From sequence record NC_009452.1: a DNA stretch of 23,814 bases; one strand, written 5' to 3'. Under the pieces are notes generated by a model. The model was not told the origin of the DNA, made no database searches, and was given only the letters and a program-made list of their open reading frames with translations. How positions within the stretch are numbered: position 1 is the first letter of the stretch; every line of letters begins with the position of its first letter. The translations under genes were made by a program, and so were the position numbers. Below are positions 1-23,814 of the stretch, in pieces.

Positions 1-15
1 TCCCCCCTTGGGGGA
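1..15 (+). other. Terminal mini-hairpin TCCCCC-CTT-GGGGGA
   Basis: 1-6 is the reverse complement of 10-15. An equivalent motif sits at 23800-23814. Confidence 0.85.
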
Positions 16-127
16 GTCAGTGGAGCATTAGATTTCTATTAATTAGATTATCCCTAACTAATTATTATTTATTCTCTCTTATTATTTTTATGTCTCGCCC
101 CTTTTCTTTCGGGGCATTTCTTTTTTC

Positions 128-301
128 TCAAGTAATGTATGTGCAAATCAAGTATAAAAATCTTTCTGAACTGTTGTTGTAACCTGCTTGAGTATGTGAG
201 TGAGAGTTGATAGCGTTATTACCGTCTGTTTGTGTTGTTCTAAGGGTAGTGGAAAAAATGTAAGGTGAAGCGGTGAAGGGTTTCTGTGTAACTGTTGTCA
301 T
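128..301 (-). CDS. Possible 57-aa ITR-encoded ORF (MTTVTQKPF...), duplicated at the right end
   Basis: ATG lies 32 nt downstream of AAAAAG-CTTAAATA, the same spacing seen for ORF150 and ORF158. No recognisable domain. Confidence 0.3.
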   Translation of the reverse strand: MTTVTQKPFTASPYIFSTTLRTTQTDGNNAINSHSHTQAGYNNSSERFLYLICTYIT

Positions 302-332
302 GATTCTCTGTGAATGTATTGTGTGAAACTGG

Positions 333-346
333 TATTTAAGCTTTTT
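333..346 (-). promoter_or_regulatory. BRE/TATA-like element in ITR, facing the terminus
   Basis: AAAAAG-CTTAAATA on the - strand; same core as at 6062 and 20681. Confidence 0.5.
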
Positions 347-744
347 GGTATTTGTGTCATGAGTTGTTGTCATGTGTCTCTGGTTATAATGTGTGTGGTA
401 AAGGTTTAAAAAACTTTCGGTTTGTGAGTGGGTATTATTGTTGAGTGTTTGTGTTTGAGCTAGGTTTTGTGTTTGTGCTTGTTGTGTTATTGGATTGTTG
501 GATTGTTGTATCATTGTTTGTCTGTTTTGTTCTTATCTTACTGGGATTATTTAAAGCTTTCTGTGACCTGGAAGGTGAATAGGATTTAATAGAGAGAAAA
601 TTTGGAATGTGAAAAGTATGTATGATTTCTAGTGACGTGGGGGGTTCGGATACCGGGGTGTCCCCTCCCCCCCGGGTACCCTCTTGCCTAGCTAGCGTAG
701 TTTGTATTTTTCTAAGGGGGTATTCTGACCGGGTCTAGGGTAAA

Positions 745-10095: not shown

Positions 10096-10281
10096 CTATC
10101 TCTTTGCCAATCTGGTTATCCATACGGTGAAGTCATTTAGATACCTAAACGTATCCATTATCCAATGCCCAAACCCTCTGATTACATACTTTGCTAAGGT
10201 AAAGAGAACATCAAATGTAATTCGGGTTAATGCTTTCAAGATCTGACCAAGAAGATCAGAGATTCCTAGGAAATTCGCCAT
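10096..10281 (-). CDS. ORF61a, amphipathic or membrane protein, paralog of ORF61b
   Basis: 18/61 identical to ORF61b without gaps. Confidence 0.8.
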   Translation of the reverse strand: MANFLGISDLLGQILKALTRITFDVLFTLAKYVIRGFGHWIMDTFRYLNDFTVWITRLAKR

Positions 10282-10328
10282 GCTATCTTATTACTGATTA
10301 TAAGGTGAGAATAAGTAAGTGATTATTC

Positions 10329-10514
10329 ATGGCTCAGTTTCTTGGTCTTGGTGACATTGGCGGTAATCTTGTTTATGAGCTTATTATGATTCTTTACAAG
10401 ATCTTCAAGTTCATTTCACTCAAGATTTTAGATGGACTTGGTAACTTCATGGAAATTGCTTTGGAGTATCTAGTGAAGTTTGTTTATCAGATCACAAGGT
10501 TCATACATAGGTAA
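10329..10514 (+). CDS. ORF61b, amphipathic or membrane protein, paralog of ORF61a
   Basis: Same length as ORF61a; shared MAxFLG start and ITRxxxR end. Confidence 0.8.
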   Translation: MAQFLGLGDIGGNLVYELIMILYKIFKFISLKILDGLGNFMEIALEYLVKFVYQITRFIHR

Positions 10515-10545
10515 CCATTTTATGCGGTTATAAGAGTGAGAAGAA

Positions 10546-11319
10546 ATGGGTGAACAAGTACTTGACTTTAGAGGTTTATTTGATGAGAGAGGAAATCCTA
10601 TTACAAAGCGAAAAAAGGCGGTAGAACAAGTGGAAGAAGTGGTAACTCCTGAGGAGAAAACTAAAGTTGTTACTGTAGAGAAACCTGTTTACATTCCTGT
10701 TGAAAAGAGAAAGTTAAAACGTAAGATAACTTTTGCTCCTGAAGATAGTTTATCTACTGATGATGTTTTTGCTCCCAGGGTTTACTATGATTATAACTTC
10801 TCTCCTTTTGACTTTCTTTCGAGAAGTAGAACATTTGCTCCCAGAATGTCTTACGATTACGAATACGCCCCAGAGGACTTTAGTTCTTATTCAGAGGTTT
10901 ACTCTCCTTCAGAAAGTTATGACGATACATTTGCTCCTAAGTATAGGAACTTTAGGAAGTCTGTTTACTCTCCATCCACAGTTATTAAAAACAAATTTGC
11001 TCCAAAAGTTACACAAAGAATTAAATTCAAACCTAGACTATTTGATAAGTTGTTAGCTATCTTTGCTCCCGAATCTATACTTAAAACTAAGGAGAATGTT
11101 AAGTATAAGCCATACAATTATCAGTACCAAGAAACGGCTATTATAGATACTTATAATCCAGAACAGATAACAACTGTTGAGAAGTTTTCCCCTAAAGATG
11201 AGAGTAACTTTAACTTGAGAATTGCTCCAGAGACTGACTTTTCGATTAAATTAAGTCCTCCTCCAATCTCATTTACAAGTGTTGACTACTATGGTATTTT
11301 AAAAAAGATCATAAGATGA
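10546..11319 (+). CDS. ORF257, [FY][AS]P repeat protein
   Basis: About 16 aromatic/aliphatic-x-Pro motifs spaced roughly 10-16 aa apart. Confidence 0.88.
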   Translation: MGEQVLDFRGLFDERGNPITKRKKAVEQVEEVVTPEEKTKVVTVEKPVYIPVEKRKLKRKITFAPEDSLSTDDVFAPRVYYDYNFSPFDFLSRSRTFAPRMSYDYEYAPEDFSSYSEVYSPSESYDDTFAPKYRNFRKSVYSPSTVIKNKFAPKVTQRIKFKPRLFDKLLAIFAPESILKTKENVKYKPYNYQYQETAIIDTYNPEQITTVEKFSPKDESNFNLRIAPETDFSIKLSPPPISFTSVDYYGILKKIIR

Positions 11320-11324
11320 TGTAG

Positions 11325-11837
11325 ATGTCTAACACTTCATTTGCTTTACGATTTTCACCTAGAATTGCTAGATTTCTAGGAAATGCTTACGCTCCATCAT
11401 ACTCTGCTAAGAATACTTTTGCCCCTGCTAACAGTAGATTAACAAATTCTGTTTATGCTCCAGGCGTTGCTATTGGTAATACATACGCCCCAGCGACTGG
11501 TAGAGTGAGCTTTAATGCTTATTCACCATCATACTCTTCAAGATCTAATTACTCACCATCAACAGATTTAGCTACTGATACAAAGTATAGTCCATTCTAT
11601 GAAGGTAAGTTAAATTACTCTCCTAGACTATGGTACAGTAATGATTATAATCCATTTGCTTACATTAGCAAAAGAAGAGTGTATGCGCCATTTGATTACT
11701 ACGACTTTGCGAGAAAGATAGATTATGCCCCTACTGACATCTACGTGAAAATGCCCAAAATAAAAATAGATGATAGTGCATTAAGGTACTTGGCTGATTA
11801 TAATAGATTTATAGTTAATCTTCTGAGGGTGTTGTGA
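11325..11837 (+). CDS. ORF170, [FY][AS]P repeat protein
   Basis: 12 F/Y-[ASN]-P motifs, mostly 10 or 12 aa apart. Confidence 0.88.
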   Translation: MSNTSFALRFSPRIARFLGNAYAPSYSAKNTFAPANSRLTNSVYAPGVAIGNTYAPATGRVSFNAYSPSYSSRSNYSPSTDLATDTKYSPFYEGKLNYSPRLWYSNDYNPFAYISKRRVYAPFDYYDFARKIDYAPTDIYVKMPKIKIDDSALRYLADYNRFIVNLLRVL

Positions 11838-11838
11838 C

Positions 11839-12117
11839 ATGAGCTTAATCGGACTTGATTTATTTGACTTTGTTAAAGGAATAGTCTTACTAGCATTAAC
11901 CAGTGGCGCTACGTATGCTATTGGTAAGCAATTCTTCTCCAGTAATTATTGTGCTATTGCAAGAATTATTCAAGCGTTATTACTGTTTGCTTCTTCATTC
12001 CTCTTTGATAGTGCCGGTGCTTTGATTTTAGGAGTTATAGTACTAATAATTGGTGTAGGTAATTATCTGGCTGAGACTAATAGTAAATTCGCTTTCCTGG
12101 ATCCCAATTTAGCTTAA
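11839..12117 (+). CDS. ORF92, small multi-TM protein
   Basis: Three hydrophobic segments; first segment resembles those of ORF119 and ORF85. Confidence 0.8.
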   Translation: MSLIGLDLFDFVKGIVLLALTSGATYAIGKQFFSSNYCAIARIIQALLLFASSFLFDSAGALILGVIVLIIGVGNYLAETNSKFAFLDPNLA

Positions 12118-12118
12118 G

Positions 12119-12478
12119 GTGATCAAAATGGAGTATGTGGAACCTTTAGCCCCCTTATACGGGGGAGAATACTCAACAACTGGAATTGTAACACTAAGTG
12201 TAGGAATAGCTTTACTAGTGTTAGCTAACGCTTTTGCTTATGCCCTAGTAAAAGCTTTCGGAATACAGTCATACTATGGAAGACTGTTAGGCGGAATAGT
12301 ATTACTAGTACTATCCATGTTACTGACACTGTCAACTAACTCAATTAATAAATTCAGAGGAGCCTTTACATTTGCTATCGGAGAAATTATCATAGGCGGA
12401 CTTGACGTAATTAATGACAAGTCCGGCTGGTCTCAACCAGTAGTATCTCCAACAGTTGGATGTCAAGGAGGCGCATAA
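12119..12478 (+). CDS. ORF119, small multi-TM protein (ATG at 12128 likely)
   Basis: AAGGTGA SD; three hydrophobic segments. Confidence 0.8.
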   Translation: MIKMEYVEPLAPLYGGEYSTTGIVTLSVGIALLVLANAFAYALVKAFGIQSYYGRLLGGIVLLVLSMLLTLSTNSINKFRGAFTFAIGEIIIGGLDVINDKSGWSQPVVSPTVGCQGGA

Positions 12479-22978: not shown

Positions 22979-23380
22979 ATGTCCATGAAAGAATTCGTTC
23001 AAAAGTTAGACGAAATTCAAGCCAGTTTTTCTTCCCACTTCCCATTAGTTATCATAAACTCAAACTACAAAATAGACAATGGAATTGTTATTTTCGGTAA
23101 GAAAGGTTGGTTAAGGATTAATGAATCAGTACCGATAATGATTAACTACGGTTCACTCATTTTATTAGACACTCCAAAGAATTACATGGTAGGAGTTTAC
23201 AAAAACGTTAACGGCGGGAGAAAAATTAAATCCTATTCACCTTCCAGGTCACAGAAAGCTTTAAATAATCCCAGTAAGATAAGAACAAAACAGACAAACA
23301 ATGATACAACAATCCAACAATCCAATAACACAACAAGCACAAACACAAAACCTAGCTCAAACACAAACACTCAACAATAA
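22979..23380 (+). CDS. ORF133, hypothetical protein whose last ~51 aa are encoded by the ITR
   Basis: Alpha/beta N-terminus; crosses the ITR boundary at 23225 and ends in an N/T/Q-rich tail. Confidence 0.75.
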   Translation: MSMKEFVQKLDEIQASFSSHFPLVIINSNYKIDNGIVIFGKKGWLRINESVPIMINYGSLILLDTPKNYMVGVYKNVNGGRKIKSYSPSRSQKALNNPSKIRTKQTNNDTTIQQSNNTTSTNTKPSSNTNTQQ

Positions 23381-23513
23381 TACCCACTCACAAACCGAAA
23401 GTTTTTTAAACCTTTACCACACACATTATAACCAGAGACACATGACAACAACTCATGACACAAATACCAAAAAGCTTAAATACCAGTTTCACACAATACA
23501 TTCACAGAGAATC

Positions 23514-23687
23514 ATGACAACAGTTACACAGAAACCCTTCACCGCTTCACCTTACATTTTTTCCACTACCCTTAGAACAACACAAACAGACGGTAATAAC
23601 GCTATCAACTCTCACTCACATACTCAAGCAGGTTACAACAACAGTTCAGAAAGATTTTTATACTTGATTTGCACATACATTACTTGA
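23514..23687 (+). CDS. Possible 57-aa ITR-encoded ORF (right copy)
   Basis: AAAAAG-CTTAAATA at 23469-23482, 32 nt upstream. A GCCCC/GGGGC stem follows the stop. Confidence 0.3.
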   Translation: MTTVTQKPFTASPYIFSTTLRTTQTDGNNAINSHSHTQAGYNNSSERFLYLICTYIT

Positions 23688-23799
23688 GAAAAAAGAAATG
23701 CCCCGAAAGAAAAGGGGCGAGACATAAAAATAATAAGAGAGAATAAATAATAATTAGTTAGGGATAATCTAATTAATAGAAATCTAATGCTCTACTGTC

Positions 23800-23814
23800 T
23801 CCCCCTTGGGGGGA
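23800..23814 (+). other. Terminal mini-hairpin TCCCCC-TTG-GGGGGA
   Basis: Self-complementary. The loop reads TT on the same strand as at the left end. Confidence 0.85.

What the first reader, a model, noticed from the sequence alone, without database searches (positions are those of the whole stretch)
10546..11837. Unrecognised [FY][AS]P repeat proteins, candidate fibre or solenoid system
Seen: adjacent ORF257 (about 16 units) and ORF170 (12 units) consist of strand-like 10-16 aa units ending in aromatic-small-Pro (TFAP, VYSP, NYSP, DYAP). Both end in a similar amphipathic helix (DYYGILKKIIR and DYNRFIVNLLRVL). ORF257 is acidic-to-mixed and ORF170 is small-residue/Tyr-rich. I do not recognise this repeat family. 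Inference: beta-solenoid, beta-spiral or amyloid-like filament subunits that may co-assemble, and candidates for the thin filaments at the broad end of bottle-shaped virions or for the tip.
Basis: partly seen in the sequence, partly recalled or inferred. Interest (0 to 1): 0.7.

Follow-up and report, generated by a model that had tools for sequence, protein, structure and literature searches.

The report
Paired repeat proteins of bottle-shaped virus

Summary
The window is the complete Acidianus bottle-shaped virus (ABV) genome. ORF257 (10546-11319) and ORF170 (11325-11837) are annotated as hypothetical proteins.

Both proteins carry [FY][AS]P motifs spaced 12,10,12,10,12,10,12,10,(10,12,14), which makes a 22-residue super-repeat. 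None of 20,000 shuffles came close.

The two are ancient paralogues (hhalign E 6.5e-10, gapless over 129 columns; the tree splits them 99/99).

New finding: eight ampullavirus genomes or contigs show five different unit-length patterns. In each virus the two paralogues carry the same pattern, although they are only 3-15% identical outside the motif. This fits in-register pairing, or binding to one shared template.

The repeat has no Pfam, NCBIfam or PDB match. A profile search does link it to a very large, unannotated class of about 22-residue repeats (consensus TVSTPRLVTPGTASLTLTTFAP). These occur in long proteins of tailed phages, some annotated as minor tail proteins, and are often fused to lectin or hydrolase domains.

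AlphaFold2 monomer models were uninformative (pLDDT about 40).

Best reading: a heteromeric, in-register, fibre-like virion component. Assigning it to the 20 terminal filaments remains untested. Rivals are a heterodimeric nucleocapsid pair and an extended ruler or scaffold.

The parts
10546..11319 (+). ORF257 CDS (257 aa, 30.2 kDa, pI 9.0), the longer paralogue
   Evidence: homologues in ABV2, ABV3 and 6 metagenomic contigs
10546..10731 (+). ORF257 N-terminal Lys/Glu/Val/Pro-rich region (aa 1-62). Its length varies between homologues and ORF170 lacks it.
   Evidence: alignment (large indels, e.g. P0006)
10732..11112 (+). ORF257 shared repeat array (aa 63-189): the first FAP motif plus 11 units of 12,10,12,10,12,10,12,10,10,12,14 aa, each ending in aromatic-small/Lys-Pro
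   Evidence: gapless hhalign to ORF170 aa 10-138
11113..11259 (+). ORF257-specific extra Pro-terminated units (aa 190-238; lengths 16, 11, 12, 10). This is the best-conserved part of the family (TAIID, LRIAPETDF).
11278..11316 (+). ORF257 C-terminal amphipathic helix (aa 245-257, ..DYYGILKKIIR)
   Evidence: AF2 helix 245-256, pLDDT about 54; helical moment; conserved
11325..11837 (+). ORF170 CDS (170 aa, 19.4 kDa, pI 9.7), the shorter paralogue. It starts 5 nt after the ORF257 stop.
   Evidence: homologues
11352..11732 (+). ORF170 shared repeat array (aa 10-136): the first FSP motif plus 11 units with the same lengths as in ORF257
11775..11831 (+). ORF170 C-terminal amphipathic helix (aa 151-169, ..LRYLADYNRFIVNLLRV)
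   Evidence: AF2 helix 151-169, pLDDT 76-78
11839..12117 (+). ORF92, a small polytopic membrane protein that starts 1 nt after the ORF170 stop. It always follows the pair.
   Evidence: hydrophobic segments; synteny in ABV2, ABV3, L005, L006, L019, L020
12128..12478 (+). ORF116, a second small membrane protein of the same co-oriented gene string
   Evidence: synteny

Best explanation
ORF257 and ORF170 come from one old gene duplication. Each carries an array of even-length units, mostly 12+10, giving a 22-residue super-repeat. Every unit is closed by aromatic-small-Pro, and each protein ends in an amphipathic C-terminal helix.

They are made from adjacent, tightly spaced or overlapping genes. 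I propose that they assemble side by side, parallel and in register, unit against unit, into a heteromeric beta-rich fibre or ribbon. In this model the Pro-containing motifs mark the turns, the aromatic residues form a ladder, and the C-terminal helices set the register or anchor the assembly.

The complex is most likely a virion structural part of the bottle-shaped virus, associated with the envelope. [quoted passage not shown]

Shown: the repeat, the paralogy, the co-varying unit lengths and the profile-level kinship with phage repeat arrays. Inferred: physical pairing, beta structure, presence in the virion and position in it.
For: (1) Periodicity is far beyond chance.

(2) Paralogy. hhalign of the two families gives 96.6% probability, E 6.5e-10, gapless over 129 columns. 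Eleven Pro columns are invariant across both families. The PHROG families cross-hit.

(3) Co-variation. In 8 ampullavirus genomes or contigs with 5 different unit-length patterns, the two paralogues of each virus match:
- ABV, L008 (as far as its contig reaches), L009, L010 and L013: 12 10 12 10 12 10 12 10 10 12 14.
- ABV2: the same with one 12+10 fewer, in both proteins.
- ABV3: 12 12 6 12 12 12 10 12 16 in both.
- L019: 6 12 12 12 10 12 16 in both.
- L020: 24 12 10 12 10 12 8 12 in both, followed by 22 in one and 12+10 in the other.

(4) This is neither gene conversion nor repeated duplication. Paralogues within a virus are 3-15% identical outside the motif, against 25-71% for orthologues with the same pattern. 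The tree puts all ORF257-type and all ORF170-type proteins on opposite sides of a branch with 99/99 support.

(5) All 110 unit lengths in the matched arrays are even (6, 8, 10, 12, 14, 16, 24). A two-residue (beta-strand) geometry would predict this.

(6) Net charge per unit is anticorrelated in register (r = -0.67, permutation p = 0.013, strongest at shift 0).

(7) Gene arrangement. The gap is 5 nt in ABV and ABV2, and the genes overlap by 4-11 nt in L013, ABV3, L019 and L020. Two small membrane proteins always follow.

(8) Kinship with phage arrays.
- A profile of both families finds 235 proteins (E <= 1e-3) among 1.84 billion representatives.
- Of the 144 listed hits outside ampullaviruses, 117 have 3 or more successive motifs at 20-25 spacing, and 122 have lag 12 among their four strongest Pro-Pro spacings.
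- A profile of these phage repeats aligns in register to the ABV families (hhalign 93%, E 2.8e-7).
- The carriers sit in tailed-phage contigs.
- Weak BLAST relatives are annotated as actinophage minor tail proteins with the same G[YF]AP repeats.
- Many carriers are fused to Laminin_G_3 or other accessory domains.
Against: - Nothing shows directly that either protein is in the virion or that the two bind each other.
- AF2 monomer models are unstructured in the array (pLDDT 30-45). With only 13-15 sequences this is weak evidence, but it also fits intrinsic disorder.
- Two-residue hydrophobic alternation is significant in only 4 of 12 arrays.
- ABV units are polar and charged, whereas the phage units have a clear LxLxG[FY]AP hydrophobic strand. 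The fold therefore need not be the same.
- When Pro and the motif are held fixed and the rest is shuffled, 41% of the profile score remains. Much of the similarity to phage arrays is thus motif plus spacing.
- Charge complementarity is absent in the L013 lineage.
- The matched patterns come from few independent lineages (about 4-5).
- In L019 the match does not extend upstream of the last 7 units.
Confidence: 0.45

Rival explanations
1. Heterodimeric nucleocapsid pair. The two basic, Tyr/Arg/Ser-rich paralogues pair and coat the dsDNA, forming the 7-nm nucleoprotein filament of the virion core. This would be analogous in logic, though not in fold, to the two paralogous major capsid proteins of enveloped filamentous archaeal viruses.
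For: Both proteins are basic (pI 9.0 and 9.7). They are adjacent paralogues with matched arrays. The ABV virion contains a nucleoprotein filament whose proteins are unidentified. The motif followed by variable residues resembles S/T-P-x-x turns known from DNA-binding proteins (own knowledge, a lead only).
Against: A uniform DNA template does not explain why irregular unit lengths (6, 8, 16, 24) must match between the two proteins. The first half of the ORF257 array is acidic. There is no helical fold like that of known archaeal filamentous-virus capsid proteins. The nearest relatives of the repeat are in phage fibre-like proteins.
Confidence: 0.17
2. Extended, largely disordered multivalent scaffolds or rulers. 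Each aromatic-small-Pro unit is a short docking motif that binds one subunit of a third, periodic partner, such as a ring, lattice or filament of another viral or host protein. Both paralogues match in spacing because they read the same partner, not because they touch each other.
For: AF2 gives no structure (pLDDT 30-45) for the arrays. Only the three motif residues are strongly conserved between units. The spacing is exactly conserved while the sequence drifts.
Against: Each unit keeps its own sequence between orthologues (25-71% identity outside the motif), which is more than expected for mere linkers. All unit lengths are even. The in-register charge anticorrelation points to direct contact. 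The related phage arrays are long, hydrophobic-patterned and look folded.
Confidence: 0.2
3. Each protein independently forms a homo-oligomeric fibre (for example a homotrimer, like phage fibres), and the two act at different places in the virion. In this case the matched lengths reflect a shared length requirement rather than mixed assembly.
For: The related phage proteins are single genes, so they are presumably homo-oligomers.
Against: A shared overall-length requirement would not force the order of individual unit lengths to be identical in five patterns. The opposite per-unit charges would be repulsive in homo-oligomers of the acidic half of ORF257.
Confidence: 0.1

Closest known systems
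Undescribed ~22-residue Pro/[FY]AP tandem repeats of long tailed-phage proteins (consensus TVSTPRLVTPGTASLTLTTFAP; e.g. P0155, P0020, P0096; weak relatives include Gordonia phage Gibbles gp37 'minor tail protein')
   Same: The period is 22, built as 12+10 between prolines, and the 12-unit ends in aromatic-small-Pro. The profile-profile alignment is in register (hhalign 93%, E 2.8e-7). hmmsearch E-values reach 3e-26. The context is viral and structural.
   Different: In the phage arrays only one of the two half-units ends in [FY]AP, and the strands are hydrophobic (LxLxG). The carriers are 250-1600 aa with globular lectin or enzyme domains, they are single genes, and repeat lengths of 23-24 are also common. 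ABV has two small paralogues, polar units and no globular domain. The class has no Pfam or NCBIfam entry and no solved structure found by sequence.
Triple beta-spiral fibre shafts of adenovirus and reovirus (own knowledge)
   Same: Short pseudo-repeats with a conserved turn residue (Pro/Gly) and conserved hydrophobic positions. Parallel in-register chains. A thin fibre on a virus that, like ABV, uses a protein-primed DNA polymerase.
   Different: The period there is about 15 residues, not 10-12 or 22, and the fibre is a homotrimer. There is no sequence match: Pfam returned only one sub-threshold, unrelated hit for ORF257 and none for ORF170, and the PDB profile search found nothing.
Curli CsgA/CsgB-type functional amyloid (own knowledge)
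   Same: Two adjacent paralogous genes. Repeats of about 19-23 residues, read as strand-turn-strand. One paralogue could template the other.
   Different: The curli Ser/Gln/Asn/Gly motif is absent. There is no signal peptide and no hydrophobic segment, and no Pfam hit. Curli subunits do not need matched indels.
Paired paralogous major capsid proteins of enveloped filamentous archaeal viruses (Lipothrixviridae, Tristromaviridae; e.g. SFV1, PMC6105669 abstract)
   Same: Two structural proteins of an enveloped archaeal virus that act as a pair.
   Different: Those proteins are helical and wrap DNA. The ABV pair shows no helical core in the models and consists of Pro-punctuated repeats.

Membership tests
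Phage-type ~22-residue Pro/[FY]AP repeat class (no database entry) | 22-residue period with prolines 12 and 10 apart | tested here: met
   ABV. Phage proteins.
Phage-type ~22-residue Pro/[FY]AP repeat class (no database entry) | Aromatic-small-Pro closing the 12-residue half-unit, aligned in register by profile methods | tested here: met
   hmmsearch hits down to E 3e-26. hhalign A6 vs A5 gives 93%, E 2.8e-7, gapless over 61 columns.
Phage-type ~22-residue Pro/[FY]AP repeat class (no database entry) | Similarity beyond motif and spacing (hydrophobic LxLxG strand before the motif, T-V after it) | tested here: inconclusive
   The shuffle control keeps 41% of the score with the motif and Pro fixed. 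ABV units are polar at those positions whereas the phage consensus is hydrophobic.
Phage-type ~22-residue Pro/[FY]AP repeat class (no database entry) | Architecture: long single protein with an accessory globular domain | tested here: not met
   The ABV proteins are 170 and 257 aa with no other domain. The listed phage carriers are 244-1864 aa (apart from one unrelated low-complexity hit of 7764 aa), and some carry Laminin_G_3 and other Pfam domains.
Adenovirus/reovirus triple beta-spiral shaft | About 15-residue pseudo-repeat; match to the shaft repeat models | tested here: not met
   Period 22 (12+10). No Pfam or PDB sequence match.
Adenovirus/reovirus triple beta-spiral shaft | Trimeric intertwined fold | not testable with these tools
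   Only monomer prediction was available, and it was low-confidence.
Curli-type functional amyloid (CsgA/CsgB) | Curlin repeat motif and secretion signal | tested here: not met
   No Pfam hit at E <= 1. No N-terminal hydrophobic segment.
Heterodimeric helical capsid proteins of filamentous archaeal viruses | Helical fold wrapping DNA | tested here: inconclusive
   The AF2 models show only a short C-terminal helix, but their confidence is too low to exclude anything. No sequence match in PDB.
Ampullavirus ORF257/ORF170 families (phrog_21304, phrog_21761) | Full-length match to the family profile | tested here: met
   E 9.7e-133 and 2e-84. Both families are of unknown function.

The most novel reading that the evidence does not exclude
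The two paralogues form an obligate hetero-oligomeric, in-register beta-fibre whose repeat lengths co-evolve unit by unit. This fibre builds a signature structure of the bottle-shaped virion, either the 20 thin filaments with their basal ring or the pointed end. It would be the archaeal-virus representative of a vast, structurally unsolved fibre-shaft repeat class of tailed phages, which would be the first structural-gene link between Ampullaviridae and other viruses.
Probability: 0.22. Interest if true: 0.8.

Novelty: new variant of a known kind. Interest (0 to 1): 0.66.

Why it matters
None of the papers I could search or read identifies a virion protein of the Ampullaviridae, and the ICTV profile lists almost all ABV proteins as having no known homologues.

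The matched unit lengths in two very diverged paralogues give a concrete, testable prediction: a heteromeric complex held in register.

The same analysis nominates two candidate structural proteins for a virion shape not seen outside archaeal viruses.

It also exposes a large repeat class in tailed-phage proteins that has no family entry and no solved structure. At least 606 clusters at 90% identity are related to a single array. One structure could therefore explain both.

Tried and rejected
- **Family and structure libraries.** Pfam, NCBIfam and PDB (single sequences and profiles) gave nothing above noise. PHROGs gave only the two ampullavirus families, both of unknown function.
- **AlphaFold2 monomers.** With family alignments both models reached only pLDDT 40-42, so I did not run fold search, since its matches would be meaningless.
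- **Looking for more ampullavirus loci.**
  - IMG/VR holds only ABV itself.
  - Two JGI metagenome scans found nothing.
- **Looking for the phage-type repeat.** Two scans of representative genomes found nothing.
- **DNA-level tandem repeat.** Absent, so recent slippage is rejected as the source of the periodicity.
- **Gene conversion or independent duplications** as the cause of matched patterns. Rejected on identities and the tree.
- **Two-residue hydrophobic alternation** as proof of beta strands. Weak, significant in only 4 of 12 arrays.
- **Resemblance of YSPS strings to the RNA polymerase II CTD heptad.** Rejected: the period is 10/12/22, not 7.
- **Literature.** Searches by ORF name, by family name and by repeat strings found nothing on these proteins. 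The 2005 virion paper and a 2018 review were not held.

Full report
**Identity of the window.** The 23,814-base window is 100% identical to the complete genome of Acidianus bottle-shaped virus (ABV, EF432053; Ampullaviridae). Its ends form a 590-nt inverted repeat with 4 mismatches. The finding covers ORF257 (10546..11319, +) and ORF170 (11325..11837, +), both annotated 'hypothetical protein'. The ICTV profile says that, apart from a handful of enzymes and DNA-binding proteins, ABV proteins have no known homologues. It describes a virion with an envelope, a 7-nm nucleoprotein filament and 20 thin filaments (20 x 3 nm) on a basal ring at the broad end. I found no paper that mentions ORF257 or ORF170, or that identifies any ABV virion protein.

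**Check of the observation.**
- Each protein has 11 strict [FYW][AS]P motifs. In 20,000 shuffles of each protein the maximum was 5-6.
- The spacing of successive motifs is 12,10,12,10,12,10,12,10,22 in both proteins. The '22' splits into 10+12 once YNP and FKP are counted.
- No shuffle gave more than one 10/12 gap or more than one pair at distance 22, against 8 and 8 observed.
- Pro autocorrelation peaks at lags 22 and 44.
- No other reading frame of the genome has more than one such motif.
- The counts of 16 units (ORF257) and 12 units (ORF170) are right.
- There is no DNA-level tandem repeat.
- Across 15 family members and 12 aligned motif columns, the position before Pro is A/S in 84% and the one before that is Y/F in 98%. 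The other positions vary.
- The C-terminal helices are predicted and are amphipathic.

**The two proteins are paralogues.** BLASTP finds several in-register segments (E 4e-8). A profile-profile comparison of the two families gives 96.6% probability, E 6.5e-10, over 129 gapless columns (ORF257 63-191 against ORF170 10-138). A joint alignment keeps 11 invariant prolines. Each protein also hits the other's PHROG family weakly.

**Relatives and synteny.**
- ORF257 homologues: ABV2 (P0008), ABV3 (P0161) and several short metagenomic contigs.
- ORF170 homologues.
- The gene order ORF257h-ORF170h-ORF92h-ORF116h is kept everywhere it can be seen. ORF92 and ORF116 are small polytopic membrane proteins.
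- The pair is separated by 5 nt in ABV and ABV2, and overlaps by 4-11 nt in L013, ABV3, L019 and L020.

**Main new result: co-varying unit lengths.** I cut each protein at every proline. The two paralogues of one virus share the same series of unit lengths, while the series differs between lineages:

| Virus or contig | Series in both paralogues |
|---|---|
| ABV, L009, L010, L013 | 12 10 12 10 12 10 12 10 10 12 14 (L008 matches as far as its contig reaches) |
| ABV2 | 12 10 12 10 12 10 10 12 14, exactly one 22-residue unit fewer in both |
| ABV3 | 12 12 6 12 12 12 10 12 16 |
| L019 | 6 12 12 12 10 12 16, the last seven units; upstream the match is lost |
| L020 | 24 12 10 12 10 12 8 12, then 22 in one protein and 12+10 in the other |

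L011 (P0009, short form) is followed by the start of an ORF170 homologue identical to the short-form P0002, but the contig ends too early to be sure.

Within a virus the paralogues are only 3-15% identical outside the motif. Orthologues with the same pattern are 25-71% identical. A maximum-likelihood tree puts all eight ORF257-type and all eight ORF170-type proteins on opposite sides of one branch with 99/99 support.

The duplication therefore predates the sampled ampullaviruses. Gene conversion is excluded, and the matching indels arose in parallel in both genes. The simplest cause is a physical constraint that couples the two arrays unit by unit. That could be direct in-register pairing, or both proteins reading the same irregular template.

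**Further hints.**
- All 110 unit lengths inside the matched arrays are even (6, 8, 10, 12, 14, 16, 24). Odd lengths (9, 11) occur only in the ORF257-specific tail. Even steps are what a two-residue beta geometry predicts.
- The hydrophobic alternation itself is weak, however (p<0.05 in 4 of 12 arrays on one scale).
- Mean net charge per unit is anticorrelated between the families in register (r = -0.67, permutation p = 0.013). The sum of products is most negative at shift 0. Five of the first six ORF257 units are acidic or neutral (one is +1) where ORF170 is basic, and the pattern reverses later. This does not hold in the L013 lineage.

**Structure prediction.** AF2 monomer models built with the family alignments were poor (mean pLDDT 42.3 and 40.0). 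The arrays scored 30-45, and only the ORF170 C-terminal helix scored well. This fits either an obligate oligomer modelled with a shallow alignment or intrinsic disorder. It supports no solenoid model. No multimer prediction was available.

**Wider kinship.**
- *The hits.* A profile of both families, searched against 1.84 billion representative proteins, gave 235 hits at E <= 1e-3 and 28 at E <= 1e-10. A few are divergent ampullavirus homologues (P0022; P0028, which matches ABV3; P0138). Nearly all the rest are long proteins (median 697 aa) with tandem arrays of 20-24-residue repeats.
- *Their periodicity.* Of the 144 listed hits outside ampullaviruses, 117 have 3 or more successive [FYW][AST]P motifs at 20-25 spacing. 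In 135 the Pro autocorrelation peaks at lag 20-24, and in 122 lag 12 is among the four strongest.
- *Consensus and register.* The consensus of 72 three-repeat windows from 57 proteins is TVSTPRLVTPGTASLTLTTFAP, with prolines 12 and 10 apart. A profile of these repeats aligns in register to the ABV families: the 12-unit on the 12-unit, hhalign 93%, E 2.8e-7.
- *Control.* A full shuffle, or a shuffle that fixes only the prolines, abolishes the score. Fixing the prolines plus the motif keeps 41%. The similarity is thus largely, but not only, motif plus spacing. A few hits are plain low-complexity false positives (P0048, P0129).

**What the phage-type proteins are.**
- No Pfam, NCBIfam or PDB family covers the repeat.
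- The contexts are those of tailed phages. P0020 lies downstream of a gene matching 'internal virion protein' (phrog_511) and next to a 1660-aa protein. The L021 protein lies upstream of a major head protein and a tape-measure gene. P0012 sits on a 171-kb contig full of small unannotated ORFs.
- tblastn of the P0155 array hits actinophage genes annotated 'minor tail protein'. Gordonia phage Gibbles gp37 shows PRA.L.I.GYAPTV repeats of about 24 residues.
- A word-indexed search with the P0155 array returned 606 clusters at E <= 1e-5 (capped), almost all named 'hypothetical protein'. They lie on contigs of up to about 100 kb, and a few carry accessory Pfam domains. PF13385 Laminin_G_3 is confirmed. 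PF13472, PF14099 and PF00041 I recall as SGNH hydrolase, polysaccharide lyase and fn3.
- This is the usual make-up of phage fibres and spikes: a repetitive shaft plus a binding or enzymatic head.

**Interpretation.**
- Most likely (0.45): ORF257 and ORF170 form a heteromeric, parallel, in-register, beta-rich fibre or ribbon that belongs to the virion and is associated with the envelope.
- The thin terminal filaments are a natural candidate. A triple-beta-spiral-like rise of about 1.3 nm per unit would give 14-21 nm for 11-16 units, whereas a cross-beta rise of 0.48 nm per unit would give only 5-8 nm (own knowledge of these folds). This is arithmetic, not evidence.
- Rivals: a heterodimeric nucleocapsid pair (0.17), extended rulers or scaffolds reading a third periodic partner (0.20), and two separate homo-oligomeric fibres (0.10).

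**Novelty.** The repeat is not in any family library I could search, and the unit-by-unit co-variation between two ancient paralogues has not, to my knowledge, been described for viral fibre proteins. The general kind, tandem-repeat fibrous virion proteins, is known. I therefore rate it a new variant of a known kind.

Noticed in passing
window 10096-10281 (-) and 10329-10514 (+): ORF61b and ORF61a are divergently transcribed paralogues: 18/61 identical, with the same N-terminus MA.FLG..D and the same C-terminus ITR...R. They look helical, have no TM segment, and lie directly upstream of ORF257. The pair is also present in ABV2 and in contig L011.
   Followed up: partly
window 10298-10309 and 10528-10540: A similar short motif, TTATAAGGTGAG / TTATAAGAGTGAG, precedes both ORF61a (20 nt before the ATG) and ORF257 (6 nt before the ATG). 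It may be a TATA-like box plus a GGTGA-type ribosome-binding site. An ATTTTAT lies at 10517-10523.
   Followed up: no
window 10733-11056 (+), annotated 'ORF9(in)' 10769-11056: An open frame of 107 aa lies inside the ORF257 repeat region in another reading frame. The longest open stretch in that frame varies from 45 to 108 codons among homologues, so it is probably a by-product of the repeat's codon make-up rather than a gene.
   Followed up: partly
window 11839-12478 (+): ORF92 and ORF116 are small polytopic membrane proteins that always follow the repeat pair (ABV2, ABV3, L005, L006, L019, L020). ORF92 homologues share an invariant C-terminal LDP (FLDPN in six of seven). They are candidate envelope proteins of the same module.
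   Followed up: partly
loci L014, L015, L021, L023; proteins P0011-P0157, P0162-P0276: A very large, unannotated class of ~22-residue repeats (consensus TVSTPRLVTPGTASLTLTTFAP) occurs in long proteins of tailed phages. It has no Pfam or NCBIfam family and no PDB match by sequence. It is rare among cultured phage genomes (only some actinophage minor tail proteins), and a consensus DNA pattern found no match in 185,579 representative prokaryotic genomes.
   Followed up: partly
window 1-590 and 23225-23814: The terminal inverted repeat of 590 nt has 4 mismatches between its arms, and only the first 7 bases are a perfect inverted repeat. The 'phages' copy of the record is flagged circular although the genome is linear.
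   Followed up: partly
window 10624-10642: A 9-bp direct repeat (GAACAAGTG x2.1) lies in the Lys/Glu/Val-rich N-terminal region of ORF257. The length of this region varies greatly between homologues; P0006 is 56 residues longer overall, nearly all of it in this region.
   Followed up: no
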